This document shows positions 15,580 to 55,457 of a stretch of DNA of 64,000 bases, in pieces. The stretch is from positions 159,507 through 223,506 of IMG/VR virus record IMGVR_UViG_3300038465_000091. The stretch is one strand, 5' to 3'. A program made the position numbers and the translations under genes. The notes under the pieces were generated by a model. That model searched no databases and was not told where the DNA came from. It saw nothing but the letters and a program-made list of their open reading frames with translations. The number at the start of each line of letters is the position of its first letter. The stretch's first letter is position 1.

Positions 15580-15673
15580 AGGGACTACAAATCCGTTATA
15601 TAGGTGCCGATTAGAGCGGTTGGGAGAAAACAGATGGCTAACGAATTTTACACCTACCTGTGGGAGCATCATA

Positions 15674-18600
15674 ATGCCTAATGGAAAAATCAGTCAGCTT
15701 GCCTCAGGCATCCCCGCCCAAGGTGGAGACCTGCTCCTCATAACACGCATTGGCTCGCCCAATCAAAGCCTTTCCGTGTCGGCGGCGAGTGTCGCGGCTC
15801 TGGGCGGTGGATCGTTCACCAATCTTGCGACTGGCACCAACACCGCAGCCACATTTACGATAGGCAACGGAGCATCACTCACGTTTTCGGGTATCACATC
15901 CCCAGTCATTACGCAATTAGCTACGGCGTCAGCTTACGCCATCCTCGGTGCATCAGCAGTCACGAACTCGGACGGTGCAAGCACCATAATCAGCGGCGGG
16001 AACATCGGCTCCTTCCCGACCAACACAATCACGCCGGGAAGCCCGCCATGGACTCTTTCGGGTGCAGCAGTGATTACGGCAGTTGCTCAAAACCAGACAG
16101 ACTTGGCTACAGCAATCGCAACTTACCAAGCGATGGGGCCGGGAACCGCCCTTGGTGTGGCTCTCGACGGCCTAACCCTCACCCCCGGCGTTTACAGCGG
16201 CGGCACTTTCACCATCAGCGGCGGAACACTAACTCTCAACGGCGCGGGCGTTTACGTTTTCCTCGCCTCAACTACGATTGGCTTGACGAGTGCTTCAACA
16301 ATCATTCTGGCAGGTGGTGCAACAGCCGCGAACGTTGTTTTCGTTTGTGGCAGTTCATTCACCGCAGCCGCCAACGCTGGCACCGTGTTCAACGGCAACA
16401 TTCTCGCACATACCTCCATTACAGTTGATGGCGGTATTTACAACGGTCGGTTACTTGCCAATATCGGAGCAGTCACCATTTCTACCGCTACCACCATCGC
16501 TACACCAGTGGGCTCTTCTCTTGGCATAATCAATGCGAATGAAATTTTCGGCGTGGTTGTTAGCGGGATAGCCCCAACCGCAGGACAAGTTCTCACAGCA
16601 ACAAGTGCCACAACAGCGAATTGGCAAACTCCCAGCGGGGGCGGCGGTTCGGGAACAGTGACCTCAGGCACCGTGGGACAAATCGCTATTTATGCAGCCA
16701 GCGGCACTACGGTTAGCGGCTTTTCCAATGGCGTGTTTTACCCCGAGACGTATGGCGCGGTTGGCAACGGTATCCACGATGACACTACAGCCATCCAAGC
16801 AGCAATCACAGCCGCTTCAGCGAGCGGTGGAACAGTTCAGTTTGGTGTCAAGACCTACCTTATCACTGCTACGCTTGTAATCACCTCCTCTAATGTCGGC
16901 ATGGCGGGATTGACCGCAGGTACTCCCGTTGGGGGAGGCGCTAGTGGAACCATAATCACTTGCAACAGCGCAACTGTCGATATGGTAAATGTCGGCAACG
17001 GCGGCACACAGGTTCACAGCAATCTTCTAAAAGACTTCTGCCTTGCACGATCCGTCACTCCCACCACTGGAAACGGACTCATACTGAACAGCGTGATCGA
17101 TGCCAAGCTGGAAAACCTCTGGGTCTTCGACAGCATCTTCTGCTTCTATCACCAGAATGCCCAGCTTTGCACGTACACTAATTGCTTAGCTGAATGGACG
17201 GCCCTCAGCAACGGCATCACGGGATACGGCTTTAAGATGGTGGGAACAAACACTACGGGGTTCTTCTCTACGCGAATGACGGACTGTATTGCCATCAACA
17301 AAGCGTCCTCAGGAACTTTCCATGGAATGCACGTAAGCACTTCGGGGGCTGGAGTATCCGATCTTTTCACCGAGGGTTTCGAGACGGCCTCATGCACGTA
17401 TGGAGTGTACATCGACGGAGCTTCATCTAACTTCAACGAAGATATTCATTTCTTAAGAACCATCCACGACGCTTCAACTGTGAGTGCTTTTTATATCACA
17501 GGTTTGAACGGGCACGACGCTTACGTAGAAATAAACGGCGGGTACACAGCTAATCTTGGGTCGGCACCCGCTATCGACATCGAGAACAGTTCTGGAGTTG
17601 TAGTTAACAATGTCAATTTCATCGGGCTCAACGCCGGTACTGGTCCGTGCGTCCTAATAAATGGTTCTAGCTCAAAAGGTAATATCGTTCAGTCGAACGT
17701 GATGTACTGTAGCTCTACGTCGCAGACCGTGATTAGCCTTACGGGGAGTGCCGCGAATAACAACGTCAGCAGCAACATCATAGTTGGAGCCGTGCACAGC
17801 TTCGCCGTTGGTATCGGTCTGGCTTCGTCGTCATACAACACGGTTGACGGAAACACGTTGTCAGGTACGGGCACAGTAGGAATTTCATTGGACACTGGCA
17901 GTGGGCACAACGGTGGAGTCAACGTAGTCGATCCCACATCTATCACAACCCCTCTATTGGATCATGGCACGGGGAATTTCGTTACGATCACTGGAGGCGG
18001 CGGTTCGGGAACGGTCACTCACACGGGTTCGTTGACTTCAAATGCCATCATTCTTGGCAATGGCTCTGCGGATATTAAACCGGGGGTAGTTCTTCCCGGC
18101 AGCGTGACGGTCTATTATGACGGTACGGGAAATTTCAGCGTGCCGGGAGGTGGAGGGGGAAGTCCGGGCTCCCTATTTGCTAAAACGTGGTTTACAACGG
18201 GGCTGGCGGGGCAGAGAGCAATAAATACTGTCTATCAGAACACCACGGGGCAACCCATCATAGTGTTTGGGTGGATGGTGGGAAATAACAACGATCTTCA
18301 AGCCGTGACCGATGCATCTCCCACCCCGTCTACAGTAGTGTTAGACCAGTATGCCCAGTCGGGATTTGGCACCAATTTCTTTTTCATGGTGTCTAACAAC
18401 GATTACTACGAACTCATCTGCGTTGGTGGTACTTCTGTAGCTTGGGTAGAGTTGGAGATTATCACAGGGAGCGTTACATTTTCAGGAGAATTGTCGGGCA
18501 GTCGTTCGCTAAGTACGGTTTACCAAAACACCAGCGGCGGAGCAATGCTGGTGCTGGTCGATCTTTCAAGCGTCGGTGGTGGTACAACCATCCAAGGTAT

Positions 18601-19102
18601 AAGTGACGCTGGCGCTTCCCCCACAAACGTTGTTTGGCAGTCCGATGGGGTCTCCACGGGAAGCCAGACGATCTGGATGATGATTCCGAACAATCATTAC
18701 TACGAAGTGACTTGCTCGGGGGCGTCTGTTGGACATTGGAATGAGTATTCTCTGCCATTCAATGCTTCCAAGTCCATTGATTATTCGATTGCTCCAGTGC
18801 TGAGAAGTCTTCAAGCCATCGCGGGTTCCGCCCCATCAACCACAGGCGTTCAGATAGCGAGTGTGGGCAAAGATATGTTTGTATCGGTGTCATCCCTGCC
18901 TTCAACGACGGGAAATTTGATTATAAACTCCAGTTATTGTTCCCCTCCGGGAACTACTCCGTATGATACCACCACTATGTCGAACACCAATTCGCAACGT
19001 AGTGCGGGGGCACTGTTTGTATCACTTGGGGAATTCTATACCGCTCGACAAAACAGTGGTTCGCCCACGTTGGCTCACTGGTGGGAATATACACTCGGGT
19101 AA
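15674..19102 (+). CDS. Fibre/spike protein: DUF3494 ice-binding-like domain, pectate-lyase-like beta-helix and C-terminal NTVYQNT repeats
   Basis: YAILGASAVTN...LTPGVY...GGATAANVVFVCGSS...GNILAHTSIT...GRLLA (about 15914-16508); YGAVGNGIHDDTTAIQAAI beta-helix start; three C-terminal repeats. Confidence 0.8.
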   Translation: MPNGKISQLASGIPAQGGDLLLITRIGSPNQSLSVSAASVAALGGGSFTNLATGTNTAATFTIGNGASLTFSGITSPVITQLATASAYAILGASAVTNSDGASTIISGGNIGSFPTNTITPGSPPWTLSGAAVITAVAQNQTDLATAIATYQAMGPGTALGVALDGLTLTPGVYSGGTFTISGGTLTLNGAGVYVFLASTTIGLTSASTIILAGGATAANVVFVCGSSFTAAANAGTVFNGNILAHTSITVDGGIYNGRLLANIGAVTISTATTIATPVGSSLGIINANEIFGVVVSGIAPTAGQVLTATSATTANWQTPSGGGGSGTVTSGTVGQIAIYAASGTTVSGFSNGVFYPETYGAVGNGIHDDTTAIQAAITAASASGGTVQFGVKTYLITATLVITSSNVGMAGLTAGTPVGGGASGTIITCNSATVDMVNVGNGGTQVHSNLLKDFCLARSVTPTTGNGLILNSVIDAKLENLWVFDSIFCFYHQNAQLCTYTNCLAEWTALSNGITGYGFKMVGTNTTGFFSTRMTDCIAINKASSGTFHGMHVSTSGAGVSDLFTEGFETASCTYGVYIDGASSNFNEDIHFLRTIHDASTVSAFYITGLNGHDAYVEINGGYTANLGSAPAIDIENSSGVVVNNVNFIGLNAGTGPCVLINGSSSKGNIVQSNVMYCSSTSQTVISLTGSAANNNVSSNIIVGAVHSFAVGIGLASSSYNTVDGNTLSGTGTVGISLDTGSGHNGGVNVVDPTSITTPLLDHGTGNFVTITGGGGSGTVTHTGSLTSNAIILGNGSADIKPGVVLPGSVTVYYDGTGNFSVPGGGGGSPGSLFAKTWFTTGLAGQRAINTVYQNTTGQPIIVFGWMVGNNNDLQAVTDASPTPSTVVLDQYAQSGFGTNFFFMVSNNDYYELICVGGTSVAWVELEIITGSVTFSGELSGSRSLSTVYQNTSGGAMLVLVDLSSVGGGTTIQGISDAGASPTNVVWQSDGVSTGSQTIWMMIPNNHYYEVTCSGASVGHWNEYSLPFNASKSIDYSIAPVLRSLQAIAGSAPSTTGVQIASVGKDMFVSVSSLPSTTGNLIINSSYCSPPGTTPYDTTTMSNTNSQRSAGALFVSLGEFYTARQNSGSPTLAHWWEYTLG

Positions 19103-19126: not shown

Positions 19127-19789
19127 ATGTCCGTTTCGTTTGGTCCTAAAATCCCGCAACTTTTCGTCAGCGCAGCCCTCGGTGATAACTACTACACTGC
19201 GGGTGAGGCAATGCTTCGTAGTTTTCAAGCATTGATTCAGCCGAATGTCATCGGCGTCGGGCTGAACACACCGCCCGGCTCACCTGCCAACGGGGACTCC
19301 TACGTTGTTGGGACTGCTCCCACGGGTTTGTGGACAGGCCAAGCCAACAGTATCGCCTATTGGACTACGGATGATCCCACCAACATACCGGGCTACTGGA
19401 TGTTCTTTGTCCCTAAATCGGGATGGATTGTAGGGAGCGCAGGTCAAATCTATATCTTTGGCACATCGTGGGGGCTCATCTCCTCAGGAGTAGCGATCAA
19501 TAATCAGACAGTCAACTACGTCGCCGCCTTGTCCGACAACAACAACATGACGGACATGAACATGGCTACACCCGGCACGTTCACGGTTCCACCGAACTCC
19601 AGCGTGGCTTTTCCGATTGGCGCGGTTCTGACCGTGGTTCAAGCGGGGATAGGTCAAATCACGTTTGTACAGGGCGCTGGTGTGACCATTAACACCCCCG
19701 CATCGCTGGCAACCCGTACTCAGTTTTCAACAATTGCTGTGACTCAAACCGCCGCAAATGTTTGGCTGGCTAGTGGAGACCTCGCCTAA
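19127..19789 (+). CDS. DUF2793-like tail-associated protein
   Basis: NTPPGSPANGDSYVVGTAPTGLWTGQANSIAYW...W.F..PKSGW; C-terminal VPPNSSVAFPIG...W...GDLA fibre domain. Confidence 0.75.
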   Translation: MSVSFGPKIPQLFVSAALGDNYYTAGEAMLRSFQALIQPNVIGVGLNTPPGSPANGDSYVVGTAPTGLWTGQANSIAYWTTDDPTNIPGYWMFFVPKSGWIVGSAGQIYIFGTSWGLISSGVAINNQTVNYVAALSDNNNMTDMNMATPGTFTVPPNSSVAFPIGAVLTVVQAGIGQITFVQGAGVTINTPASLATRTQFSTIAVTQTAANVWLASGDLA

Positions 19790-38145: not shown

Positions 38146-38886
38146 TTATCTGTTAGCGCGAGAAACGAAATATTGATCGAAATCGGGATGATCGATACGA
38201 ATTCTAAACTCACCTAGTATAGGAGAGTCGCAACGATATATGTTCCCGAGCTTCTGAACCTTCCGCTTTGAAAATCCCGTCCCGCTCGGGTTGGCCTTGT
38301 CAATCAGACTGTGGATGAACGCACCCAACGCCTTCTCCTCAGGGTCCTTGGATTCCAGCAGTTGCTTACTTGACCTACTCATTGCACGGCGGATGTCGGG
38401 GCGGTGGAGTTTGTGAATCTCGGCTACCCGCTGGAATGAACGAGTCTTGATGTACAGGTCGATGATCGTGCTCAGGGGCACGCTCTTGATACTGTGCTCA
38501 AGCTTTGCCTGCACTAACACATCCTTCATCTTCCCCTCGGTAAACTCCTCCCCATACAGGATGAACGCACACAGCACCTTGACCGCCATGCGGATACGGA
38601 ACGAGCACACCGTCTGCGTACTGCGGTGGATGATCGCCAGTGTGTTCTGGGTCTTGCTCAACAGGTAGTAGCTCAGCAGGAGTTCCTGATCCTCTTTCTT
38701 CAAGAGGCGCAAAATCTTCAAGAACATTGGGAAATTCTCCTGAATGTAGGTGAGGATTTTTTGGTCTTCTTTTTTCTTGGGATCGGACTCTGCACTGAGA
38801 AGGGTCTGCCCTTCGAGGGCTTCTTCATCGGTTAGGAGCATTGCTCGCGAGGCGCAAATCGAATCCATATAAGGAGTATTTTCCAT
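38146..38886 (-). CDS. Sigma-70 region-4-like double-HTH protein (putative transcription factor)
   Basis: LRLLKKEDQELLLSYY...KTQNTLA..H..TQTVCSFRI..AVKVL and IIDLY..TRSFQRVAE.....RPDIRRAM. Confidence 0.55.
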   Translation of the reverse strand: MENTPYMDSICASRAMLLTDEEALEGQTLLSAESDPKKKEDQKILTYIQENFPMFLKILRLLKKEDQELLLSYYLLSKTQNTLAIIHRSTQTVCSFRIRMAVKVLCAFILYGEEFTEGKMKDVLVQAKLEHSIKSVPLSTIIDLYIKTRSFQRVAEIHKLHRPDIRRAMSRSSKQLLESKDPEEKALGAFIHSLIDKANPSGTGFSKRKVQKLGNIYRCDSPILGEFRIRIDHPDFDQYFVSRANR

Positions 38887-39008: not shown

Positions 39009-40409
39009 TTAATCATGCCAAGCGGCGACGTGAACGTGACCTGTGTGAGGAATGGAATCATTGTTTGAAACCCAAACGTTCAAGCCTACGCCAGCAATCG
39101 TCTGAAAAGCGACGTAACTGACCCCGACGCTCGGGAACTGCGTGACGGTGGGTGTGCCGGGTGCCACTTCATCTCCAAGTACGGTGACTTGTACCGTGTA
39201 GTTGTTGTCCGCGAATGCCGAGGAAAACGTCATTGCGATGGGGCCTGTGACCCCACCCTGAGTAAAAGATGTGGCGGTGGAACGTACAGTCTTAAATTTA
39301 CTGCCGCCCGTCGCGGCGTCCACGTAGGCTGTAGTTGCGATCTGGGTGTTATTCGTGAGCGGGGCCGCCGTGGGAGCAGTCGGAGTACCACTGAGTGCGG
39401 GAGACGACAACAGAGCGTAACCCGACAAGGCTGCGACAGTGATGAAGCCCTGTGAAGTAGCAAATGTCTCCGCGTTAGATTGAGCCGTAGCCGCTGCGCC
39501 AAATGCGTCGTAGAACGCCGAGTAATCCCCCGTCAGAGGTATTACCGCCCCCACACGACCGTTGAAGGAGCTTACACCCCCGCCCCCGCCTGCGGGAGTC
39601 AACCAGCTTGCTTTTAGTGGCACGATGATGGTTGTTGCAGCCGTAATGGTTACCGCACCAGTCAAAGCGATGGCCTGACCATTCAAGGTGCCCCCGCCTA
39701 ACGTGACACTTGTGTGGGCTAGAATCGTGCCGACCATGTTGCTAGTTGCAACTGATGTGAAAGAGCTACCGACTAGCCAGATGACAGTCGTGTTAGAGGA
39801 TGTTGCGAAACCTGAGAAACTTACGGATTGACCAGAAGCCAAATTTACCGTGCTTACGGCTTTGAAGATGTATGTGCCGGGGGCTGTGAGTACGATACCC
39901 GTTGGCATCGTCATCGAGCTTGTGGATGAGTAATTACCGGGAGCATACGTATTGCCGCCGCCGATACCACCTATGCTCAGATTGGTGCCGAGCGGTGTGA
40001 AAGTAAGCCCGCTGTAGTACGTGTATGCTGCCTGAGCCGCCGTTTGAGCCGCCGATGCATCGGCGCTGTCCACTATTGCTGGGGGTGGATTGAAGCCCGT
40101 GATTGTGGCGGTGGGAAAGGAGCCGATGGTTCCGCTAGTGACGACGGACGATGACCCTGTGTTCGTGATTCCGCTACCGGCGAGGATGGCGTAATTTGCC
40201 GCCGACCCTAACTGGGAATTTGCGATTATCGTCGTGAGGACCTGTCCGGGAATGGGGGCAACACCATCGAATGCCACGCCGCCGTTTATCACGGCGTCAA
40301 GTGCTCCCCAGTTGAAGTTATACTCGCGGTGTTCCTGATCGTCGTACCGCGATAAGATCAAGCCGAGGACTGGCGTGATTGTGTTGCCAAGTTGGGAATT
40401 ATAGCTCAT
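39009..40409 (-). CDS. Fibre protein with a DUF3494 ice-binding-like domain
   Basis: LGSAANYAILAGSGITNTG...VIWLVGSS...GTILAHTSVT...LNGQAIA; VSSFNGRVGAV and SPALSGTPTAPTA...TQIATTAYV fibre motifs; ATGA overlap with the upstream gene. Confidence 0.8.
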   Translation of the reverse strand: MSYNSQLGNTITPVLGLILSRYDDQEHREYNFNWGALDAVINGGVAFDGVAPIPGQVLTTIIANSQLGSAANYAILAGSGITNTGSSSVVTSGTIGSFPTATITGFNPPPAIVDSADASAAQTAAQAAYTYYSGLTFTPLGTNLSIGGIGGGNTYAPGNYSSTSSMTMPTGIVLTAPGTYIFKAVSTVNLASGQSVSFSGFATSSNTTVIWLVGSSFTSVATSNMVGTILAHTSVTLGGGTLNGQAIALTGAVTITAATTIIVPLKASWLTPAGGGGGVSSFNGRVGAVIPLTGDYSAFYDAFGAAATAQSNAETFATSQGFITVAALSGYALLSSPALSGTPTAPTAAPLTNNTQIATTAYVDAATGGSKFKTVRSTATSFTQGGVTGPIAMTFSSAFADNNYTVQVTVLGDEVAPGTPTVTQFPSVGVSYVAFQTIAGVGLNVWVSNNDSIPHTGHVHVAAWHD

Positions 40410-41131
40410 AGATGCGTTTCCGTGTGCTTCCCTCTCGTGCAGCCACAACCTTTTGTGTGCCCGTTTCGCAGACTTGTACCTTCAGCGTTGAAGGTATTAC
40501 CACATCGACAACGACAGTGCCATGCCGCCTTTCCAGATTTTGTGTTGCTAACCCTGTCCATTACTGCGACACCGTTGATAATTACACCGAACATGTCTTT
40601 AGCGGGCTTAGGTTTAAGTTCTGGATGACTTCTAGATTGCTGGGCGATACACATATTGGCGATTGCTTCTGGGCCACGTTTGCGTCCAAGCCTAGCGTCT
40701 CTCAATTTTTTCCTACATTCTTCAGTATTAAGCGCAAATTTAATCTTAATAATGGTTTCAGGTGATACTTTACGCCCATGCTGTGCGACACTCATTTTAC
40801 GCCGACTCTCTTCAGTGTGAGGTCCAGTGAAACCTTCCCCACCTCGACAAATGTTGTAACCGTACTCGGGGTCTTGGGATTTGAGGAAGGCGATGAAGTC
40901 TCGTTCGTAAGCGTCAAGTTCTGGACGGGTCTGGATGTCCGACAGAAGAGCGTGGATGGTGAAGGCTTCAATGGGGCACTCTCTTAAAGCCTCGTACAGT
41001 CTAGACCGTTTCGATACTCCCTTTCTGGCGTGTCCAAATTTCTGCTGAAGATATTTCCTCAAGTTGTCACCCTTGTGCTGCCCCACGTAATATTTTCCTG
41101 TAGCATGGTTGACGATAAGGTAGATGTACAT
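40406..41131 (-). CDS. GIY-YIG homing endonuclease
   Basis: MYIYLIVN..TGKYYVGQ...GYNICRGG, NUMOD3 repeat, C-terminal W.CRCRCG...L..G.TKGCGC. Confidence 0.88.
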   Translation of the reverse strand: MYIYLIVNHATGKYYVGQHKGDNLRKYLQQKFGHARKGVSKRSRLYEALRECPIEAFTIHALLSDIQTRPELDAYERDFIAFLKSQDPEYGYNICRGGEGFTGPHTEESRRKMSVAQHGRKVSPETIIKIKFALNTEECRKKLRDARLGRKRGPEAIANMCIAQQSRSHPELKPKPAKDMFGVIINGVAVMDRVSNTKSGKAAWHCRCRCGNTFNAEGTSLRNGHTKGCGCTRGKHTETHL

Positions 41132-41181
41132 GAAACCCCTTAATGAGTTGATGTTCACTAAGGGGTTCAATAGTTGTTTTT

Positions 41182-43695
41182 TTAAGAATGGCTGATCGCT
41201 ACCGCAGCGATGAGGGTCTCATAGCCGAGTGGGTTCGCGAATGATGGTGTCCAAGAGCCGGGTGCTCCCTGAACGCCCCACTCCACAAGGTAGTGAGCTT
41301 CAGAGCCGACCAGCTTACCATTGCTGGCTCTGCTGTAGCCGCCGTTGGTGATGCTGCCGCTTCCGCCGGGAGCCGTGATGACGGTCGTAGCCGTGACGGT
41401 GACCGCTCCGTTACCACCACCCACGGCAAGTGCACGCCCATTGAGGGTGCCGCCGCCGAGAGTGATCGAGGTGTAAGCCAAGATGTCGCCGACCATGTTG
41501 CTGTTGGCAACTGAAGTGAAGGAGCTTCCAACCACCCAGACCACGTTCTGGGCCTGTGCGCCGTTAGCGAGGATGATGGACTGACCGCTCTCAAGCGTTA
41601 CAGTCGATGCCGCGACGAACACAAAGACCGCGTTCGAGTTGCCTTGAGCGTCGAGAGTGATGGAGGTCGGAATGTCCAACGCCCCACCTTTATAGACGCC
41701 AGCGTGGTACACACCTGCCCCACCACCACCGTTGTTGGTGCTGAGGTTGGCAAGACCCGACTGGGTTGCGGTCAGACCGCTGTAGTAGCCAAACGCCGCG
41801 TTACCCGCGAGTCGCGCTGCCGCCGCATCTGCGTTGTCCACGATTGCCGCTGGGGGATTGAAACCAGTGATGGTCATGGTCGGGGCCGAACCGATGTCGC
41901 CGCCCGTTATTGAAGTCGAGGACGAAGCGTTCGTGATCCCGCTGTATGCCAACAGAGCATAGTTAGCAGCCGAACCCAATTCAGCGTTGACAGAGGAACT
42001 GTAGGCTATCAGCGTAGAGTCCGTGCCGAGGCCGAGACCGTTGGCGTTCTTCTGGAGACCTACTACGATGACAAGATCGCCAGTTGGCGGCGAGCCGCTG
42101 CCGGACGTGACTATCGCGGCGGTAACAGCGGGATTAGCCGCCGTGATTGCCGTCTGCGAGAAACTGGCTGGAGAACCACCATCTTCGATTGCCACGCCCG
42201 TCATGCCCGTCCAATCAATCACTTGGAAGTTGATGCCGCCGTCGAATACTGGCTTGCCAGCCGCGAGGTCGAGCGGAGCCGTAATACCGTTCTGATATAC
42301 GGAGTTGAGGTTGACTGGGTAAGAGCCGCCGATTGCCGAGGCGCAGACCCAAACGTAGAGACTTGGGTAATAGCCGTCGATGTTCCAATCCGCTGCTGGC
42401 CATGGGAGGTTAGCAGCGGGAGGAATCGAATACCCGCTGTAGTCCGCGTCCGCGAGGTTGATGCTTGCCACGAGTACCCAGTTGTTTCCTGCGGAAACCG
42501 TTCCCCCACCCGGCGAAGTGACAGCCGTGGCGGTACTGATGCTGATTGCACCAGACGTTACCACGATGCCCGCGAGTGCGCGACCGTTGAGGACGCCGCC
42601 GCCGAGAGTGATGCTGGTGTTGGCGAGAATCGTACCGACCATTGTGCTTGTTGCAACGCTGGTAAAGGAGCTACCGACGATCCAGACTACGTTAGCCGCC
42701 TGCGCCCCGTTGATGAGGGTCACAGCCTGCCCGCTTGCTAGATTTACTGTTGACGCTGATTTGAAGATGAACAGAGCGCCCGAGTTGCCTTGAGCGTCAA
42801 GAACGATGCCCGTGCTCATTGCCATGCTGGAGGTAGCGGAGTAGTTGCCTGCTCGGTAGACGTTACCGCCTGCGATACCCGACGTACTCAGATCGACCAC
42901 GCCGCCGAGTGACGTAAAGGTCAATCCTGAGAAGTAGTTGTACGCCGCGAGAGCGTCAGTTTGAGCCTGCGCTGCGTCTGCGTTGTCAACCACTGCGGGA
43001 GGAACGAGAACCCACGCGCCCGGTGTGATGGTCGTGGTCGGGAATGAGCCGACGTTACCACCCGTGATGACGGACGAGCCCGAGTTCGTGATTCCAGCAG
43101 CCGCCAACAGTACGTAGTTCGCTGCCGACAGTAAGTGCTGGTTGACGACGGGAATCGGGGTGGTGGAGTTGTGGTCCGAGATTGTCGGAGCAGGCGGCAT
43201 GAAGTCGTTCAAGCCCTGAAGGTAACCGAAATTGGGGGACAAGCCGTGAAGCTGATCGAACGGGTCGAGACTCTTGAGGCCGAATGCGATGGCTACAAGT
43301 GTATCGCCAGCCAATGGGCTGACATAGACGTTATCGCCTTGGTCGTTTGCCCACATGTTCGAGACTTTTGAAGCGTACTGCAAAGGTGTGCCCCATCCAA
43401 CAACCAGTTGGACCTGACCAGCGGCAACTACCGCCATGCCATTGCGGTTGTTGAGGACGAGGGTCGTTGCGGAAGATTGGAGGCACAGGAACGTGCCATT
43501 GTTGCTCGCATTGGCGAAACCGCTGACGGTAAAAGCCTGACCTGCGTAGGCTCCGTTCGGCTGTGTTGCCGTGACTGCCCCACCAGTGATGGTTCCAGTG
43601 TAGGTTGTGCTGGCACTTGGCGACCCGGGAAACGGGTAAACTGCATTGCCGACCTGCGTCAATACGAAAACTGGACCGATTGTTGGTACGCCCAT
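41182..43695 (-). CDS. Virion appendage protein with two DUF3494 ice-binding-like domains
   Basis: Two copies of SAANY.LLA..GITN...LDAQGNS.A.F.F...NGAQA.NVVW.VGSS...G.ILA.TSITLGGG.LNGRALA (about 43137-42510 and 41983-41370). Confidence 0.85.
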   Translation of the reverse strand: MGVPTIGPVFVLTQVGNAVYPFPGSPSASTTYTGTITGGAVTATQPNGAYAGQAFTVSGFANASNNGTFLCLQSSATTLVLNNRNGMAVVAAGQVQLVVGWGTPLQYASKVSNMWANDQGDNVYVSPLAGDTLVAIAFGLKSLDPFDQLHGLSPNFGYLQGLNDFMPPAPTISDHNSTTPIPVVNQHLLSAANYVLLAAAGITNSGSSVITGGNVGSFPTTTITPGAWVLVPPAVVDNADAAQAQTDALAAYNYFSGLTFTSLGGVVDLSTSGIAGGNVYRAGNYSATSSMAMSTGIVLDAQGNSGALFIFKSASTVNLASGQAVTLINGAQAANVVWIVGSSFTSVATSTMVGTILANTSITLGGGVLNGRALAGIVVTSGAISISTATAVTSPGGGTVSAGNNWVLVASINLADADYSGYSIPPAANLPWPAADWNIDGYYPSLYVWVCASAIGGSYPVNLNSVYQNGITAPLDLAAGKPVFDGGINFQVIDWTGMTGVAIEDGGSPASFSQTAITAANPAVTAAIVTSGSGSPPTGDLVIVVGLQKNANGLGLGTDSTLIAYSSSVNAELGSAANYALLAYSGITNASSSTSITGGDIGSAPTMTITGFNPPAAIVDNADAAAARLAGNAAFGYYSGLTATQSGLANLSTNNGGGGAGVYHAGVYKGGALDIPTSITLDAQGNSNAVFVFVAASTVTLESGQSIILANGAQAQNVVWVVGSSFTSVANSNMVGDILAYTSITLGGGTLNGRALAVGGGNGAVTVTATTVITAPGGSGSITNGGYSRASNGKLVGSEAHYLVEWGVQGAPGSWTPSFANPLGYETLIAAVAISHS

Positions 43696-43814: not shown

Positions 43815-44333
43815 ATGGCGTTGCTGAGGGGCTATTTATACGTGATCGCTGATAAAGGTCGGCAGTTTGCAAAAATAGGCATGTCACGGGATGTAATTTC
43901 CAGATTCAAGGGATTGCAGACCGCCTGTCCGCTTGATTTGGAGGTGGTGAGTGCCCATCCATGTACGTATGTCCGCTTTCGGGAATTCAAGGCTCATGAA
44001 CAGTTAAAGGATTTGCGCCTTAGAAATGAGTGGTTTAGTTGGGATGAGGTTAGGATAAATACGGCCATTGAGAAGGCTTTGGCGATTCCCGATGAGGTCA
44101 TAAAACCCAGTTTAGAAAAATTGTGGATGTCGAAACCAAACCCAGAACCAGAGGTTAAAGTTAGAGTCCATAGCTACCCTGTAAAACGGGTGGACACTGG
44201 GGAAGTATTTCCCACCGCTCAAGCGGCTGCCGAGGCGGTATTAGGTTCTAAGAGGCTCGCCAAGAAAATCAAGCAAGCGATCAGGGATGGGGCGAAATGC
44301 GGACCCACGTTCTGGGCAAGGGGAGATACATGA
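43815..44333 (+). CDS. GIY-YIG family protein (T5orf172/MUG113-like) with NUMOD1-like tail
   Basis: GYLYVI...AKIGMS...RFKGLQTACP..L...H..L..LRLRNEWF; DTGEVFPT...AAE. Confidence 0.8.
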   Translation: MALLRGYLYVIADKGRQFAKIGMSRDVISRFKGLQTACPLDLEVVSAHPCTYVRFREFKAHEQLKDLRLRNEWFSWDEVRINTAIEKALAIPDEVIKPSLEKLWMSKPNPEPEVKVRVHSYPVKRVDTGEVFPTAQAAAEAVLGSKRLAKKIKQAIRDGAKCGPTFWARGDT

Positions 44334-45040
44334 GCGTAGCACTTATCTTCATCTGCACGGGAGCCAACTATCACAAATACATCGAACCCGCAGTTGCCAG
44401 CGCGAAGAAGTATTTCCTGCCGCAGCAAACAGACATCCTGTTGTTTACGGATAGCGAGCGGCAGTACGACGTGGCGAAACAAGTCCAGTCGCCTCATCTC
44501 GGCTGGCCCAATGTCACGTGGCGCAGGTTTCATACGTTCTTGGGCGAGGAAGTTTGGCTGTCCGAGCATGACTTCCTTTGGTACATGGACGTTGACTCGG
44601 AGATCGTGGCCCCTGTGGGGGAGGAAATCTTTTCCGATGGCATCACCGCCACGGTACACACGTCGTTCATCCTGAGTAAAGGGACGTACTGCACTCCCGA
44701 GGAGAATCCGCGATCCGCCGCCTGCTTGAGCAAGAAAGACATCCGCAAGATGTACACGGGAATGTCCTACGGTGGAACATCTAAAGCTTTCCTCGCGTTG
44801 TGCCGCGAGTGCGCTACGATTGTGGACATCGACACCAAGAATAATTTTGTTCCCATTTGGCACGACGAAAGCGTGCTCAATAAATATCTGTACGACCACC
44901 AACCAGCCAAGGAGCTTGGAGAAGATTACAATGCTTGGAACAGGAAACCCAGCACCAAGGTGTTTCGCGTCCCCAAACCCGGTGCTCCGAATCGTCCTGC
45001 CGTCAACGGAGTTCAGCCGTCCGATCCGAGGAATGCATGA
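44330..45040 (+). CDS. GT6 family glycosyltransferase (ABO-like alpha-1,3-Gal/GalNAc transferase)
   Basis: ICTG.Y..Y......AKKYF...FTD...WP..T..RF...YMDVD...YGG...WHDESVLNKY. Confidence 0.85.
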   Translation: MSVALIFICTGANYHKYIEPAVASAKKYFLPQQTDILLFTDSERQYDVAKQVQSPHLGWPNVTWRRFHTFLGEEVWLSEHDFLWYMDVDSEIVAPVGEEIFSDGITATVHTSFILSKGTYCTPEENPRSAACLSKKDIRKMYTGMSYGGTSKAFLALCRECATIVDIDTKNNFVPIWHDESVLNKYLYDHQPAKELGEDYNAWNRKPSTKVFRVPKPGAPNRPAVNGVQPSDPRNA

Positions 45041-45744
45041 GGGTATTAGTAGCTATTCTCGCCTGCCACAGGTACGTCGCAATAAATGGTCGGGGTTGGG
45101 ATTGGACGAATAGGGATAAGCACCGCCTCATTCCCGTAGACGCGCAGATAGCCGCGTGTCGGGAGACTTGGGTCAAAGGTTTGGCGACGTACCCCAATGT
45201 CGATGTTAGATTCTTTTATGGACGCGGGGCGAACCGTCAGCCGCTAGCCGATGAGGTATTTTTGGATGTCGCGGACGATTACAAAAATCTACCATACAAA
45301 ACGAAAGGTATCTGTGGGTGGGCAAACGGGCATTACGATTTCACATTCAAAACGGACGACGACACCTTTGTTTGGACGAACAACCTCATGAATAGTGGGT
45401 TTGAAGGTTGCGATTACGTGGGCTCCGTCAACGACACCAGACCCCAAAGCCTCTATGCAACGGGGCTGGGGTATTGGTTGAGTGCAAGAGCAGTGAGATT
45501 GGTTGCTGGCGCAATCCCTAATACTGATTTAGAAGACCATTGGGTGGGGTCGGTGCTTCGTAAGTCGGGGATTGTTCCAAAACACGATAAGCGATACGTC
45601 AGTATAGGCAGCAAATTTGTGGGGGTAGATGCGATGCCTCGAAATTCCGAATTCATTGCCGTTCATCCGTGTAGTCCAGATATGATTCATACTTATGATT
45701 TCGAGGAATGTCCTCGGGGTCGTCCTTGGAGCCAAAATGATTAA
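45037..45744 (+). CDS. GT31-like galactosyltransferase
   Basis: RETW...LDVADDYKNLPYKT...FKTDDDTFV...DYVG...GLGYWLS...EDHWVG. Confidence 0.85.
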   Translation: MRVLVAILACHRYVAINGRGWDWTNRDKHRLIPVDAQIAACRETWVKGLATYPNVDVRFFYGRGANRQPLADEVFLDVADDYKNLPYKTKGICGWANGHYDFTFKTDDDTFVWTNNLMNSGFEGCDYVGSVNDTRPQSLYATGLGYWLSARAVRLVAGAIPNTDLEDHWVGSVLRKSGIVPKHDKRYVSIGSKFVGVDAMPRNSEFIAVHPCSPDMIHTYDFEECPRGRPWSQND

Positions 45745-46531
45745 CGTCACGCTAGATGGTGGGTTGGGTAATCAGCTTTTTCAATATGCCCTCGGTCGCA
45801 GATTCGCGGCCAATGGGCATGATGTTACGTTTGACAGAACACGTGTGGTCGATTATGATGGTGCCGCCCACCATAAAACTCGCGCTCAGTATGGTCTAGA
45901 CGGGTTTAATACTACAGTAAAGTTCGGTAGCCCCATAGGTCCGATCTTCAGCGACTACAATTTCCCGGGGGCTTTACCATTTCGACCTGAAGTCTTGAAT
46001 TTGCCCGCTCCCCACACCTTGAGGGGGCATTGGCAGAGTGAGCAATATTTTGCGAATGTGGGTGAGCTTCGTAAGGAATTGACACTCAAGGTCCAACCCA
46101 GTAGTGCCGTTCAAAGTGTCGCGGAACGAATTAAAGCTGGTAACAGCGTGTTCCTGCACGTTCGTCATGGTGATTATCTGATAAAGGAAAACGTGACGTA
46201 CCATGGTCTGATGACCCCCGAATACTACACTCGTGCATTGGGGTTCATCTCAGCCCGTGTAACTGATATCAAGCCCTTCATATTCTCGGACGACCCGGAG
46301 TGGTGCCGACAGAATTTGGCAGGGGAAGTTATAGCTGGGAATAATCAGTTTGAAGACCTGTGGTTGATGAGTTTGTGTCAACACGCCGTCATCGCCAACA
46401 GCACATTTAGCTGGTGGGGTGCGTGGCTAGGTGATACACAAGAGCGCATAGTGGTAGGACCCGCCCAATGGTTTTTGACACCCCATTTAGACGCACGTGA
46501 CATCATCCCGACACGTTGGGTAAAACTATGA
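45737..46531 (+). CDS. GT11 alpha-1,2-fucosyltransferase
   Basis: GGLGNQLFQYA, GHWQSEQYF, HVRHGDY, FSDD, DLWLMSLC.H.VIANSTFSWWGAWL. Confidence 0.92.
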   Translation: MINVTLDGGLGNQLFQYALGRRFAANGHDVTFDRTRVVDYDGAAHHKTRAQYGLDGFNTTVKFGSPIGPIFSDYNFPGALPFRPEVLNLPAPHTLRGHWQSEQYFANVGELRKELTLKVQPSSAVQSVAERIKAGNSVFLHVRHGDYLIKENVTYHGLMTPEYYTRALGFISARVTDIKPFIFSDDPEWCRQNLAGEVIAGNNQFEDLWLMSLCQHAVIANSTFSWWGAWLGDTQERIVVGPAQWFLTPHLDARDIIPTRWVKL

Positions 46532-47477: not shown

Positions 47478-48737
47478 ATGGATTTGAATAACCCAGAAAT
47501 CAAACGCTGGACAGACAGTGGTACTGCATGTTGGGGCGTAACCGACGAATACAAGGGCGAACTGATCCTTGATTATGCGCGGCGTTTCAACCTGATGACT
47601 TTCGTCGAAACTGGAACATGGCACGGCGGCACCGTGGAGTATGTCAAGCAGCATTTCGACCAGATTCACTCCATAGAACTGTCCCCGGAGCTTGTCGAGA
47701 ATTGCAGAAAAAGATTTTCTGGTTCGCCCAACATCCACTTATATCAGGGTGACAGTGGTGAAAAGATCAAGGAGCTTTTTGGTGGTCTGAAAACTCCGAC
47801 GCTATTCTGGTTGGACGCACACCCGTCAGGCGGTGACACTGTTGGAACCTACAGTCCCTTGGAGAAGGAGCTTACGGCTATTTTTGAGAGCGGCGTCAAA
47901 GGCGTTATCCTGATTGACGACCTACAGGATTGCTGGGAACACAATTGGGCAGAAGTGGCGATGCGGACAGTCGCCAAATACAGCGGTTGGCGGCATGAAA
48001 TAACCCACGGCATCATGAGGATCGTATCCGTAGACGCCAGTGTCATCATCCCCCTGTACAACCTGCAAGACTTCGTGGGGCAAACCATCGAGTCCGCGCT
48101 CAATCAGACTCACCGATTTTTTGAAGTTATCGTCGTCAACGATGGGTCCACAGACGGGAGTCTCAATGTAGCGAAACGCTATGGAGATCGTATCATATTG
48201 ATAGATCAGCAGAACGCTGGATTGAATGCATCGCGTAACGCCGGAGCCAGAGTGTCAACGGGGACTTTCCTACTGCCGTTGGACGCCGACGACTGGATCG
48301 AGCCAACGTACCTTGAAAAGACTATCCCTTTAATGACTGAGGGCATTGGTGTAGTGTCTACCGATATGGACATATTTGGCGAGGTCAGTCGGGCGGACAT
48401 ATCTGGCGAGGTCAATCGGTTGCAGCCTATTGGTAGACCTACTCTCGAAATTCAAAAATGGGCGAACACGATGCCGTGCTGCTCCCTAATACGGCGCACA
48501 GCGTTTAACCAAGCTGGCGGCTATAGCGCCCGCCCAGACATTCAGGCTTACGGAGATTGGAATCTTTGGATTGACATTCTCAAACGCGGTTGGAAAGTCG
48601 CCTCACTAGCGGAACCCTTGTTTCACTATCGTGTGCGCCCGATATCAATGAGTTTAGAAGTATCATCAAAGCACGCTGAACTGGCGAAGGCTATTCGCCG
48701 TAATCACCCCGACCTGTTTAGGCTGGAGGAAAGATGA
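47478..48737 (+). CDS. SAM-methyltransferase-like and GT2 glycosyltransferase fusion
   Basis: FVETGTWHG...SIELS...GDS...FWLDAH...ILIDD, then SVIIPLYN...VVNDGSTD...LDADD. Confidence 0.85.
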   Translation: MDLNNPEIKRWTDSGTACWGVTDEYKGELILDYARRFNLMTFVETGTWHGGTVEYVKQHFDQIHSIELSPELVENCRKRFSGSPNIHLYQGDSGEKIKELFGGLKTPTLFWLDAHPSGGDTVGTYSPLEKELTAIFESGVKGVILIDDLQDCWEHNWAEVAMRTVAKYSGWRHEITHGIMRIVSVDASVIIPLYNLQDFVGQTIESALNQTHRFFEVIVVNDGSTDGSLNVAKRYGDRIILIDQQNAGLNASRNAGARVSTGTFLLPLDADDWIEPTYLEKTIPLMTEGIGVVSTDMDIFGEVSRADISGEVNRLQPIGRPTLEIQKWANTMPCCSLIRRTAFNQAGGYSARPDIQAYGDWNLWIDILKRGWKVASLAEPLFHYRVRPISMSLEVSSKHAELAKAIRRNHPDLFRLEER

Positions 48738-53029: not shown

Positions 53030-53150
53030 GGGCTGCGACTTAATGCCCGCCAGCCGCAGCCCATGCAAGGTTCCAAAACTGTCATGACAGTTCCAGAGAG
53101 CGGCCATGCCCGCAAACCCAGCAAGAGCCGGGTTATATGGACGGCGGGAA
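53030..53150 (-). ncRNA. Putative structured RNA between convergent genes
   Basis: Minus-strand stems close with G-U pairs (53134-53127/53122-53115; 53062-53052/53040-53030); palindrome at 53077-53092. Confidence 0.4.
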
Positions 53151-53154
53151 TTAC

Positions 53155-53457: not shown

Positions 53458-53492
53458 GGTTCTTTAATTTAATTACAATAAAGTTTCCCGAC

Positions 53493-54398: not shown

Positions 54399-54513
54399 GA
54401 GAACTCCTTGCTAATTAAAGCACCCGAAAGTCGATAACTCTGGTTAATACCCATCAGAAAGCCGTTTGTTTCCCGAAAATCAACTATCGGATGCTACTTC
54501 AGAGGGTAACAAC

Positions 54514-54831: not shown

Positions 54832-54832
54832 C

Positions 54833-55453: not shown

Positions 55454-55457
55454 ACCT

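What the first reader, a model, noticed from the sequence alone, without database searches (positions are those of the whole stretch)
39009..43695. DUF3494 behaves as a mobile module inserted four times in frame into fibre proteins
Seen: four copies in three genes. ORF 15674 has the intact linker GIAPTAGQVLTATSATTANWQTPSGGGG. In ORF 39009 the same linker is split by the domain: GVAPIPGQVLTT-[DUF3494]-KASWLTPAGGGGG. In ORF 41182 the copies interrupt PTISD-[ ]-GNNWVL and GLGTDS-[ ]-GYSR. The three minus-strand copies share near-identical stretches (VGSSFTSVA.S.MVG.ILA.TS.TLGGG.LNG; TITGFNPP.AIVD.ADA). Inference: repeated, selected decoration of virion appendages with ice-binding modules.
Basis: partly seen in the sequence, partly recalled or inferred. 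Interest (0 to 1): 0.72.

Follow-up and report, generated by a model that had tools for sequence, protein, structure and literature searches.

The report
Ice-binding-type domains nested in phage tail proteins
A giant phage from peat and permafrost carries six copies of the DUF3494 "ice-binding" fold spliced in frame into loops and linkers of its tail-appendage proteins. Relatives with empty sites show these are exchangeable add-on modules, but whether they bind ice or the host surface is untested.

Summary
The window holds four PF11999 (DUF3494) domains in three genes. The whole 223.5-kb phage record holds six in five genes.

The insertion reading holds for every window copy:
- P0001: three orthologs have the intact GQVLT...W.TP.GGGG linker where P0001 carries a 205-aa domain.
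- P0002: natural 312-377-aa homologs have both sites empty, with the flanks rejoined. Others fill only site 1, or hold a different small module there.
- P0003: the closest homologs have a different N-terminal module before the same linker.

The copies are old paralogs, not recent DNA copies: 40-78% aa identity, saturated synonymous sites, no repeats at the junctions. They are under purifying selection (dN/dS 0.13-0.35). Orthologous sites in sister phages hold non-orthologous cassettes (AU test p about 4e-6). "Mobile" therefore means recombinational domain shuffling, not a self-mobile element.

The fold is confirmed: AlphaFold2 pLDDT 93-98 exactly over the insert, and the top 31 PDB matches are all ice-binding protein crystal structures.

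Ice binding itself is not shown. The phage lives in peat and permafrost, but filled and empty alleles occur in one permafrost run. The family also includes substrate binders. Three of the copies, queried by tblastn, matched none of 50,697 GenBank phage records.

The parts
39012..40409 (-). P0001: tail-fibre protein (the ORF runs on to the TTG at 40448; the likely start is the ATG at 40409). It has a conserved N-terminus, a split linker, and a C-terminal knob at aa 380-479.
   Evidence: PHROG tail-fibre families at aa 238-393. Orthologs P0005, P0009 and P0010 begin at the same MSYNSQLGNT / MAPYNPQLGNT motif. The AF2 C-terminal domain has pLDDT about 88 and weak Foldseek hits to R1 pyocin fibre and H-type lectins.
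39615..40229 (-). DUF3494 copy E (P0001 aa 74-278), nested inside the GQVLT...W.TP.GGGG linker. It replaces about 10 loop residues present in the orthologs.
   Evidence: Pfam E=4e-25. AF2 pLDDT is 93-98 exactly over this span. The top 31 Foldseek PDB hits are all DUF3494 ice-binding protein crystal structures, TMt 0.66-0.78. Three orthologs have the site empty.
40230..40265 (-). Left half of the split linker motif (GVAPIPGQVLTT).
   Evidence: It is contiguous with the right half in P0005, P0009 and P0010.
39576..39614 (-). Right half of the split linker motif (KASWLTPAGGGGG).
40406..41170 (-). Free-standing GIY-YIG/NUMOD3 homing endonuclease gene (P0004) between P0002 and P0001.
   Evidence: PHROG homing endonuclease E=2e-24 and weak Pfam GIY-YIG/NUMOD3 hits. 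This slot is empty in sister phage G001. A 25%-identical GIY-YIG gene sits elsewhere in the locus in G001 and G002.
41182..43695 (-). P0002: phage all-beta scaffold protein (the core family is about 250-380 aa) carrying two nested DUF3494 modules.
   Evidence: Full-length orthologs at 74% and 60% identity in six IMG/VR contigs. The scaffold family has 36 cluster representatives. The AF2 model of insert-less homolog P0129 has pLDDT 82. BFVD matches include mycobacteriophage 'minor tail proteins'.
42490..43173 (-). Site-1 insert of P0002 (aa 175-402) = DUF3494 copy A, in an inter-domain stretch that is an insertion hot spot.
   Evidence: Pfam. Site 1 is empty in P0129, P0135 and others, and holds other modules in P0130, P0134 and P0138. 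The copy at this site is not orthologous between this phage, G001 and G002.
41341..42015 (-). Site-2 insert of P0002 (aa 561-785) = DUF3494 copy B, nested in a loop of the C-terminal beta-sandwich.
   Evidence: Pfam second stretch. Site 2 carries no DUF3494 in any scaffold homolog except the P0002 orthologs; it is empty in most, and a few hold other inserts of about 50-100 aa. In the P0129 model the site falls in loop 309-327. It is orthologous to G001 site 2, with dN/dS 0.13.
15620..19102 (+). P0003: tailspike-like protein (likely ATG at 15674). Order of parts: N-terminal region, DUF3494 copy F, intact linker, pectate-lyase-type beta-helix, two C-terminal repeat domains.
   Evidence: Homologs at 64-71% identity carry PF12708/PF13229 and no PF11999. 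The gene lies 3.7 kb downstream of the major head protein gene.
15941..16492 (+). DUF3494 copy F (P0003 aa 108-291), the most divergent copy. It is part of an N-terminal cassette, not an interruption.
   Evidence: Pfam E=6e-24. It is 40-45% identical to the other copies. Close homologs have a different N-terminal module before the same linker.
16565..16648 (+). Intact copy of the fibre linker motif (GIAPTAGQVLTATSATTANWQTPSGGGG).
19127..19789 (+). DUF2793 tail-fibre-type protein (220 aa) without DUF3494. A 615-aa protein of sister phage G002 with a 67%-identical N-terminal part (aa 2-112) carries a DUF3494 plus a linker.
38146..38886 (-). Conserved downstream neighbour P0008, which anchors the synteny of the variable P0002/P0001 locus.
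   Evidence: 92% identical in G001 and G002, and present after the insert-less P0129 and after P0010.

Best explanation
What it is (shown). The segments are genuine DUF3494 (PF11999) beta-solenoid domains. In a clade of jumbo phages from peat and permafrost they serve as interchangeable, in-frame add-on modules of tail-appendage proteins.

Why the domain can be inserted (established knowledge plus inference). In the canonical DUF3494 fold the last coil ends next to the first, so the two chain ends lie together. The domain can therefore be nested in a surface loop or linker without breaking the carrier.

Where the copies sit (shown):
- One is inside the conserved GQVLT...W fibre linker of P0001.
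- One is in a loop of the C-terminal beta-sandwich of P0002.
- One is in an inter-domain hot spot of P0002.
- One is part of a swapped N-terminal cassette of the tailspike-like P0003.

How they spread (inferred). The modules are gained, lost and replaced by recombination between phage genomes. This is classical tail-fibre mosaicism, possibly helped by the homing endonuclease genes that crowd these loci. It is not a self-mobile element and not a recent burst of duplication.

Selection (shown). The modules are kept under purifying selection.

Function (inferred). They are displayed as accessory binding modules on the virion, next to the fibre's own C-terminal receptor knob. I put about 0.45 on a repetitive host-surface or matrix substrate (polysaccharide, EPS), as for CBM decorations of other phages. 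I put about 0.35 on ice itself (ice adhesion or protection of the virion in freeze-thaw), and the rest on a purely structural role.
For: Domain identity:
- Pfam E-values 1e-24 to 1e-61.
- A profile of the six copies matches solved ice-binding proteins over their full length; the best is 6eio at E=7e-30.
- AF2 pLDDT is 93-98 exactly over the P0001 insert, and the top 31 Foldseek PDB hits are all DUF3494 crystal structures.

Empty sites:
- P0005, P0009 and P0010 have the intact linker.
- P0129 (three independent contigs) and P0135 have both P0002 sites empty. P0128 and P0132 fill site 1 only. P0130, P0134 and P0138 hold another module at site 1.
- Close homologs of P0003 lack the domain.
- The reverse case also occurs: window gene 19127-19789 lacks the domain, while a G002 protein sharing its N-terminal part has it.

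Shuffling rather than duplication:
- Copies are 40-78% identical at aa level and 48-72% at nt level.
- There are no junction repeats and no composition shift.
- AU tests reject one clade for the six own copies (p=2e-5), for the three site-1 occupants (p=4e-6), and for copy D with its positional ortholog (p=4e-6).
- P0002 against G001: scaffold 82-94% identity, site-2 domain 84%, site-1 domain 52%. Site-1 dS is 1.40 against 0.72-0.82 for the scaffold and site 2.

Selection: dN/dS 0.13-0.35.

Virion context.

Habitat and presence in RNA libraries: peat and permafrost runs hold the locus, and perfect-match contigs occur in two metatranscriptome runs.

Distinct subfamily: in the 215-row FastTree all 91 rows from cellular genomes fall on one side of a branch (SH-like support 89), and the best cellular matches are 33-43% identical to the query copy.
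Against: - No direct evidence that any of these proteins is in the virion.
- The P0002 scaffold has no Pfam or PHROG hit, and its PDB fold matches lie within the noise range.
- The direction of change at P0002 site 1 (gain or loss) rests on a midpoint-rooted tree.
- The AU-test groups were named after the tree had been seen, although positional orthology was the prior expectation.
- Neither ligand hypothesis was tested. The site-2 copy evolves no faster than its scaffold, which argues against a hypervariable receptor-binding role.
- The metatranscriptome contigs may derive from DNA carried over into the RNA library (caveat printed).
Confidence: 0.8

Rival explanations
1. Ice-binding virion decoration. 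The displayed DUF3494 modules bind ice crystals. They would tether virions to ice surfaces or brine veins, or inhibit ice recrystallisation around the particle, as an adaptation to freeze-thaw in peat and permafrost.
For: - Full family and fold membership. The nearest solved relatives are experimentally active ice-binding proteins such as EfcIBP 6eio (activity cited in PMC10992025).
- The phage and its relatives are held by peat and permafrost metagenome runs.
- At least six copies per genome would give multivalent display.
- tblastn with three of the copies found no match in 50,697 GenBank phage records.
Against: - Ice binding cannot be read from a DUF3494 sequence.
- Filled and empty P0001 alleles occur in one permafrost run, X6.
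- Alternative non-DUF3494 modules occupy the same site in relatives.
Confidence: 0.35
2. Accessory host-surface or matrix adhesin. The flat solenoid face binds a repetitive polysaccharide (capsule, EPS, S-layer glycan) and increases adsorption. This would work like the carbohydrate-binding modules nested in tail proteins of lactococcal phages.
For: - The modules are nested in tail-appendage proteins beside a separate C-terminal knob.
- They share sites with other small modules.
- Cassette replacement at orthologous sites is typical of host-interaction modules.
- The literature describes DUF3494 as both ice-binding and substrate-binding or adhesive.
- CBM decoration of phage tail proteins is an established pattern (PMC6669499, PMC10688798).
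Against: - No sugar-binding DUF3494 is cited here with a solved ligand complex.
- The site-2 copy shows no accelerated change.
- The host is unknown.
Confidence: 0.45
3. Recent intragenomic duplication, or a self-mobile element (intein-like or homing-type) that copies itself into fibre genes.
For: Several copies lie in one genome, and GIY-YIG homing endonuclease genes sit next to two of the carrier genes.
Against: - nt identity is 48-72%, and identical codons occur at only about 40% of identical residues.
- The longest shared nucleotide run in the conserved motif is 18 nt.
- There are no repeats at the junctions.
- One clade for the six copies is rejected.
- The insert encodes only the solenoid; the endonuclease genes are free-standing and lie outside it.
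Confidence: 0.03
4. The domain is ancestral in these proteins, and the 'empty' relatives are deletion derivatives. The history would be loss, not insertion.
For: Precise in-frame loss of a domain whose ends lie together is structurally easy. On the scaffold tree DUF3494 at site 1 needs only two changes.
Against: - The intact linker motif is the common form: three intact copies in this genome and one in every P0001 ortholog.
- Site 2 carries DUF3494 only in P0002 and its orthologs.
- The basal scaffold lineages are empty, although the tree is midpoint-rooted.
- Non-orthologous cassettes at a single site require gains or replacements in any case.
Confidence: 0.12
5. Assembly or gene-calling artefact: chimeric contigs joining bacterial DUF3494 genes to phage genes.
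For: The source is metagenome-derived.
Against: - Six runs, from five samples and five studies, hold 0.91-1.00 of the sampled words of the locus.
- Contigs from four runs lie on the locus, nearly all without a single difference.
- Orthologs with the same architecture occur in six other viral contigs.
- The reading frames are continuous and the best cellular matches are only 33-43% identical.
Confidence: 0.01

Closest known systems
DUF3494 / IBP-1 ice-binding proteins (PF11999; e.g. EfcIBP 6eio, IBPv 5uyt, FfIBP 4nu2, LeIBP 3uyu, TisAFP 3vn3)
   Same: Same family by sequence: over the Pfam gathering score, and a profile E-value of 7e-30 to 6eio. Same fold: TMt 0.66-0.78 to 31 crystal structures. 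The match covers the whole domain. IBPv also carries more than one domain per protein.
   Different: The known members are secreted or cell-anchored proteins of bacteria, archaea, fungi, algae and rotifers. Here the domain is nested inside phage tail-appendage proteins. It forms a subfamily that falls apart from all 91 sampled rows from cellular genomes in the FastTree, and the best cellular matches are 33-43% identical. Ice binding is not shown. No paper in the searchable library links DUF3494 to phage virion proteins.
Carbohydrate-binding modules nested in phage tail proteins ('evolved' Dit, Tal, neck passage structure of lactococcal and other siphophages; PMC6669499, PMC10688798)
   Same: An accessory binding module is inserted in frame into a structural tail protein. 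Insert-less 'classical' versions exist in related phages. Presence and absence vary between close relatives. The role is auxiliary, beside the main receptor-binding protein.
   Different: The inserted fold is a DUF3494 beta-solenoid, not a CBM beta-sandwich. The carriers show no homology to Dit or Tal. The phages are jumbo phages of an unknown host from peat. The ligand is unknown.
Mosaic tail-fibre genes exchanging modules at conserved linkers (established knowledge of P2/Mu/lambda/T-even fibre mosaicism; from my own knowledge, not tested here)
   Same: Conserved N-terminal anchors carry swapped distal parts (P0003 against P0165-P0170; the DUF2793 pair). Short shared linker motifs occur at the module borders.
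   Different: In P0001 and at P0002 site 2 the module is not exchanged at a linker border. It is nested inside a motif or a folded domain.
Bacterial ice adhesins with an ice-binding domain on a long stalk (MpIBP; SfIBP_1, 6bg8)
   Same: A binding solenoid is displayed on an extended, multi-domain surface appendage. 6bg8 is among the structural matches.
   Different: Those proteins are cellular RTX-type or tandem beta-sandwich adhesins. MpIBP's ice-binding domain is not DUF3494 (my own knowledge). Here the stalk is a virion fibre.

Membership tests
DUF3494 / PF11999 (IBP-1 fold) | Sequence match to the Pfam model above the gathering score, covering the whole domain | tested here: met
   All four window copies score 85-207 bits per protein against a 28.7-bit cut-off, covering profile positions 1-206 of 208. 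All six genome copies are over the cut-off.
DUF3494 / PF11999 (IBP-1 fold) | Discontinuous beta-solenoid braced by one long alpha-helix, with the last coil next to the first | tested here: met
   The AF2 model of P0001 has pLDDT 93-98 over aa 74-278, with one helix (model residues 118-133) followed by stacked strands. The top 31 Foldseek PDB hits are all DUF3494 crystal structures, TMt 0.66-0.78. The adjacency of the chain ends is taken from PMC11645318; it was not measured on the model.
DUF3494 / PF11999 (IBP-1 fold) | Ice-binding activity (thermal hysteresis, recrystallisation inhibition, ice affinity) | not testable with these tools
   This needs recombinant protein. The literature states that DUF3494 proteins also occur in habitats that never freeze and may bind other substrates.
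DUF3494 / PF11999 (IBP-1 fold) | Ordered rows of outward-pointing Thr/Ser on the b face (the putative ice-binding site) | tested here: inconclusive
   Strand motifs such as TSITL, STVTL, SSFTSV and AVTVT align to the corresponding strands of 6eio. No model coordinates were available to assign residues to faces.
Phage tail fibre / tailspike proteins | Homology to known tail-fibre families or tailspike beta-helix domains | tested here: met
   P0001 hits four PHROG tail-fibre families, E 6e-9 to 1e-7. P0003 itself matched only PF11999, but its 64-71% identical homologs carry PF12708/PF13229. For P0002 there are only structural matches to 'minor tail proteins' in BFVD (E about 4e-4), so membership is weaker for that protein.
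Phage tail fibre / tailspike proteins | Physical presence in the virion | not testable with these tools
   There is no isolate and no virion proteome.
CBM-decorated ('evolved') tail proteins | Accessory module nested in a structural tail protein, with insert-less versions in relatives | tested here: met
CBM-decorated ('evolved') tail proteins | The carrier is Dit/Tal/NPS and the module is a carbohydrate-binding beta-sandwich | tested here: not met
   The module is a DUF3494 solenoid. The carriers have no Dit or Tal hit in Pfam or PHROGs. The resemblance is in how it works, not in membership.
Self-mobile insertion (intein, homing element, transposon) | Near-identical DNA copies, defined terminal repeats, or an encoded endonuclease or splicing domain within the insert | tested here: not met
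   nt identity is 48-72%. No repeats at the junctions. The insert folds as the solenoid alone. The GIY-YIG genes are separate ORFs.

The most novel reading that the evidence does not exclude
Virions of a group of peat and permafrost phages display several functional ice-binding domains on their tail appendages. They would be the first viruses known to bind ice. Possible benefits are staying in liquid veins or on ice surfaces beside their hosts, or protecting the particle from ice recrystallisation during freeze-thaw and long-term frozen storage in permafrost.
Probability: 0.33. Interest if true: 0.85.

Novelty: new variant of a known kind. Interest (0 to 1): 0.62.

Why it matters
DUF3494 is the most widespread ice-binding fold in microbes, and its spread by horizontal transfer is a long-standing topic. 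Within the held paper library and the 50,697 GenBank phage records searched here, it has no link to viruses.

This locus shows a phage-borne subfamily, embedded in virion-type proteins and multiplied to six copies per genome. It offers a natural graded series of zero, one or two inserts in one scaffold, and filled and empty alleles of one fibre. That series is a ready-made experiment.

If the modules bind ice, this would be a new way for viruses to persist in frozen soils. It would also point to a possible vehicle for moving ice-binding genes between hosts.

If they bind polysaccharide, it broadens the known functions of the DUF3494 fold and the repertoire of phage adhesion modules.

Either way, the sites are natural, selection-tested positions for domain insertion in fibre proteins.

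Tried and rejected
- Nucleotide search of the locus against GenBank phages gave only a 79-nt match to Ralstonia phage phiRSL1, which is not informative.
- PHROGs gave nothing for P0002 or P0003. Pfam gave nothing for the P0002 scaffold homologs.
- Foldseek against PDB for the scaffold model gave no hit at E<=0.001. VIA-align wide gave a best Z of 7.9 (Tuc2009 RBP head, residues 270-377), which the tool itself rates as within the noise range, so I use it only as a hint. The ESM Atlas gave only an unnamed viral cluster.
- I looked for direct repeats or a composition shift at the P0001 insertion borders and found none.
- I looked for population variants lacking an insert by laying contigs of four runs on the locus. 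No joint skips an insert. The one 89-nt joint, in X6, lies in the C-terminal part of P0001 and has a short side.
- Recent duplication or gene conversion was rejected.
- tblastn of copies B, F and E against 50,697 GenBank phage records gave no match. BLAST's low-complexity filter was on, which is a caveat.
- Literature searches for DUF3494 with phage, and for ice-binding with tail fibre, returned nothing on topic.
- PDB sequence search with the P0003 C-terminal 820 aa gave only two weak hits, to beta-helix adhesins.
- Habitats of individual IMG/VR contigs could not be decoded, so the habitat-association test could not go beyond the two run searches.

Full report
**Setting.** The window is the last 64 kb of a 223.5-kb IMG/VR virus record, which CheckV rates 71% complete, so this is a jumbo phage. 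The window encodes:
- a head maturation protease (5682-6584) and a major head protein (10983-11942);
- two free-standing GIY-YIG homing endonuclease genes (12691-13629 and 40406-41170);
- several glycosyltransferases (44297-46531 and 51301-53028);
- the three genes of the finding.

No GenBank phage is similar at the DNA level.

**Observation.** Pfam finds PF11999 (Ice_binding, DUF3494) as follows:

| Protein | Window position | Copies | E-value |
|---|---|---|---|
| P0001 | 39009-40448, minus | one | 4e-25 |
| P0002 | 41182-43695, minus | two | 4e-61 |
| P0003 | 15620-19102, plus | one | 6e-24 |

A six-frame search of the whole record finds six copies over the curated cut-off. The two extra copies lie outside the window, in ORFs of 1067 and 2073 aa.

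**The copies are old paralogs.** Pairwise identity among the six is 40-78% at the amino-acid level and 48-72% at the nucleotide level. Identical residues use identical codons only about 40% of the time. The 'near-identical' VGSSFT...LNG stretch is 78-88% identical in protein but 70-76% in DNA, with no shared run longer than 18 nt. It is therefore a conserved core motif of the fold, not recent copying.

**P0001 carries a true nested insertion.** The sister phage G001 (locus L018) has a P0002 ortholog at 74% identity. Its next gene, P0005 (321 aa), is the P0001 ortholog. It reads GVAPISGQVLTAEFVGSPPVLQASWQTPSGGGGG without interruption. Two further orthologs from the protein database, P0009 and P0010, also have the intact motif. 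They continue with the same VSSFNGRVGAV sequence that follows the insert in P0001.
- In P0001, 205 residues (aa 74-278, window 39615-40229) replace about ten loop residues.
- The junctions show no direct repeats and no GC shift.
- The same genome has three intact copies of this linker motif (P0003 once, the 1067-aa protein twice) and only this one interrupted copy.
- AlphaFold2 on P0001 gives pLDDT 93-98 over exactly the inserted span, about 88 for the C-terminal knob, and under 50 for the fibre-like remainder.
- Foldseek places the insert with 31 DUF3494 ice-binding protein crystal structures (TMt 0.66-0.78). The knob matches weakly to R1 pyocin fibre and H-type lectins.

P0001 thus keeps its own distal knob, shared with the insert-less orthologs. 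The DUF3494 is an add-on.

**P0002 has two insertion sites in a conserved scaffold.** All six orthologs found in IMG/VR keep both domains at the same positions. A search of 1.84 billion cluster representatives with only the inter-domain scaffold (aa 395-570) found 36 relatives. Their alignment gives a graded natural series:

| Proteins | Site 1 | Site 2 |
|---|---|---|
| P0129 (377 aa, on three independent contigs), P0135 (312 aa) | empty | empty |
| P0128, P0132 (about 612 aa) | DUF3494 | empty |
| P0130, P0134, P0138 and others | one or two copies of a different small module | no DUF3494 |
| P0002 and its orthologs | DUF3494 | DUF3494 |

- In the empty forms the flanks rejoin as ...NPVISD|GSANVWTL... 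and ...LGTDATLTA|PGYQRLSSGKLVGSEAHY....
- The small alternative module is the NNG.F-type unit that also forms the N-terminus of P0002.
- Site 2 carries DUF3494 only in P0002 and its orthologs. In most other representatives it is empty, and a few hold other inserts of about 50-100 aa.
- An AlphaFold2 model of P0129 (pLDDT 82, all-beta) puts site 2 in a loop (residues 309-327) of the C-terminal beta-sandwich. It puts site 1 in a low-confidence inter-domain stretch.
- The scaffold has no Pfam or PHROG family and no convincing PDB match.
- In BFVD it matches many uncharacterised Caudovirales proteins and mycobacteriophage 'minor tail proteins'.

**P0003 carries the domain in a swapped cassette.** The domain precedes the intact linker. 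The closest homologs of the beta-helix part (64-71% identity; PF12708/PF13229) have no PF11999. They carry a different N-terminal module of about 100 aa before the same GQ.L...W...GGGGSGTV linker. The reverse polymorphism also exists. The window's DUF2793 protein (19127-19789) lacks the domain. A 615-aa protein of sister phage G002, 67% identical to it over the first 112 residues, carries DUF3494 plus a linker.

**The modules are shuffled, not simply inherited.** I built an IQ-TREE of 35 domain copies with cellular outgroups.
- The site-2 copies of this phage and G001 are sisters (support 100/98).
- The site-1 copies of this phage, G001 and G002 fall in three different clades.
- Copy D falls far from the copy at the same position in the colinear G002 ortholog.

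AU tests reject monophyly of the site-1 copies (p=3.6e-6), of that D pair (p=3.9e-6), and of the six own copies (p=1.8e-5). A caveat is that the groups were named after the tree was seen.

Identity profiles agree:

| Comparison | Region | Identity |
|---|---|---|
| P0002 vs G001 | scaffold | 82-94% |
| P0002 vs G001 | site-2 domain | 84% |
| P0002 vs G001 | site-1 domain | 52% |
| 2073-aa protein vs G002 ortholog | flanks | 71-73% |
| 2073-aa protein vs G002 ortholog | domain | 46% |

Synonymous divergence is also doubled at site 1 (dS 1.40, against 0.72 for the scaffold and 0.82 for site 2). This points to cassette replacement rather than fast protein evolution. dN/dS is 0.13-0.35 throughout, so the modules are under purifying selection. 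On a tree of the scaffold alone, DUF3494 at site 1 occurs in two separate clades, and the deepest lineages are empty; that tree is midpoint-rooted.

**The locus is variable and crowded with endonuclease genes.** Gene order in five relatives:

| Source | Gene order |
|---|---|
| This phage | glycosyltransferase, P0002, HEG (P0004), P0001 with insert, P0008 |
| G001 | P0002 ortholog, P0005 (empty site), a different HEG, P0008 ortholog |
| G002 | P0002 ortholog, HEG, P0008 ortholog (no P0001 ortholog) |
| L124 | HEG, endonuclease VII, P0129 (no inserts), P0008-like |
| L126 | P0132 (site 1 filled only), P0010 (empty site), P0008-like |

P0004 is only about 25-30% identical to the GIY-YIG genes in G001 and G002, so the invasions look independent. 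Their presence fits endonuclease-promoted recombination, but that link is inference.

**Distribution.**
- The best DUF3494 matches among GTDB species-representative genomes are 33-43% identical to the query copy. In a 215-row FastTree all 91 rows from cellular genomes fall on one side of a branch (SH-like support 89). Sampling was biased by the search patterns.
- Metagenome proteins 50-63% identical to copy E are numerous.
- A pattern scan finds 57 loci in about 50 IMG/VR contigs. These include a separate group of roughly 100-kb phages in which the domain gene lies three genes upstream of a tail-fibre gene.
- tblastn of copies B, F and E against 50,697 GenBank phage records finds nothing.
- The paper library holds no report linking DUF3494 to phage virion proteins.

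**Habitat and presence in RNA libraries.** The locus is held almost completely by peat and permafrost metagenome runs, and partly by peat metatranscriptome runs. Contigs from two RNA runs lie on it without a single difference, mainly over P0002; DNA carry-over is not excluded. G001, which has the empty P0001 site, occurs in the same kinds of samples, including permafrost run X6, which also holds this phage. Presence or absence of the P0001 insert is therefore not explained by freezing against non-freezing habitat.

**Function.**

*Shown.* Family and fold membership, display in tail-appendage-type proteins, purifying selection, and modular turnover.

*Established knowledge.* In the canonical DUF3494 fold the final coil ends next to the initial coil (PMC11645318). 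This explains why the domain tolerates nesting in loops. Many DUF3494 proteins are active ice binders, for example EfcIBP (PMC10992025). The family also occurs in habitats that never freeze and is described as substrate-binding or adhesive (PMC7783341; PMC12337378).

*Inferred.* The modules are accessory binding devices on the virion.
- About 0.45 on a repetitive host-surface or matrix polymer. This would parallel the carbohydrate-binding modules nested in tail proteins of lactococcal phages (PMC6669499, PMC10688798).
- About 0.35 on ice.
- The remainder on a structural role.

The data do not separate these options. Cassette replacement and shared sites with other modules favour host interaction. 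Habitat, multivalency and close kinship with proven ice binders favour ice.

**Verdict.** The word 'mobile' should be read as recombinational domain shuffling. 'Ice-binding' remains a hypothesis. This is a new variant of a known kind: module-decorated phage tail proteins on one side, and the DUF3494 family on the other. It comes with an unusually clean set of natural controls for experiment.

Noticed in passing
window 12691-13629 (+) and 40406-41170 (-); L018:9702-10310; L022:8568-9173; L124:973-1470: Free-standing GIY-YIG/NUMOD3 homing endonuclease genes sit beside two of the three window DUF3494 carrier genes. They occupy different slots of the same locus in sister phages and are only about 25-30% identical to one another, which suggests independent invasions. 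An endonuclease VII gene lies beside the insert-less P0129.
   Followed up: partly
window 38146-38886 (-): P0008 (246 aa, no Pfam or PHROG hit) is 92% identical in G001 and G002, although the adjacent P0002 orthologs are only 74% and 60% identical. It is either an unusually constrained gene or a recently exchanged one, and its function is unknown.
   Followed up: partly
window 17900-19102 (+) and 19790-20713 (+): The C-terminal part of P0003, about 300 aa, consists of two repeats of a domain beginning ..NTVYQNT.. and ending ..W.EY.LG. The 307-aa protein encoded two genes downstream consists of two copies of the same domain. This looks like a paralogous distal module.
   Followed up: no
window 21047-26950 (+): A 1967-aa ORF with no PHROG hit. 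It is rich in CxxC pairs and has acidic and Pro/Ala-rich low-complexity stretches. Function unknown.
   Followed up: no
window 44297-46531, 47478-48737, 51301-53028 (+): A cluster of glycosyltransferase-like genes (PHROG glycosyltransferase and GtrB-like families) lies directly next to the P0002/P0001 locus on the opposite strand. One of them is 94% identical in G001 but only 53% in G002.
   Followed up: partly
P0002 aa about 30-90 (window about 43426-43608, minus strand); genome record 97133-103354 (L122): A small module with the signature YTGT..GG....G..F...GF....NNG.F.C..S....L.L.N forms the N-terminus of P0002. It recurs at least three times around the DUF3494 of the 2073-aa protein. In other scaffold homologs (P0130, P0134, P0138) it is the alternative occupant of insertion site 1.
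   Followed up: partly
genome record 53038-56241 (L121) and L038: In the 1067-aa protein and in the G002 615-aa protein, the DUF3494 is followed by the same stretch of about 70 aa (..PMT..GDMIYEG....LGP.RLPIGT.GQVLTVVAG.P.W..). The unit that moves can therefore be larger than the domain itself.
   Followed up: no
window 42078-42578, run X6: In permafrost run X6 the contigs break and have loose ends around 42078-42578, and depth drops to zero at 42180-42343. This is consistent with co-occurring strain variants (G001 is in the same run) that diverge most near the site-1 cassette.
   Followed up: no
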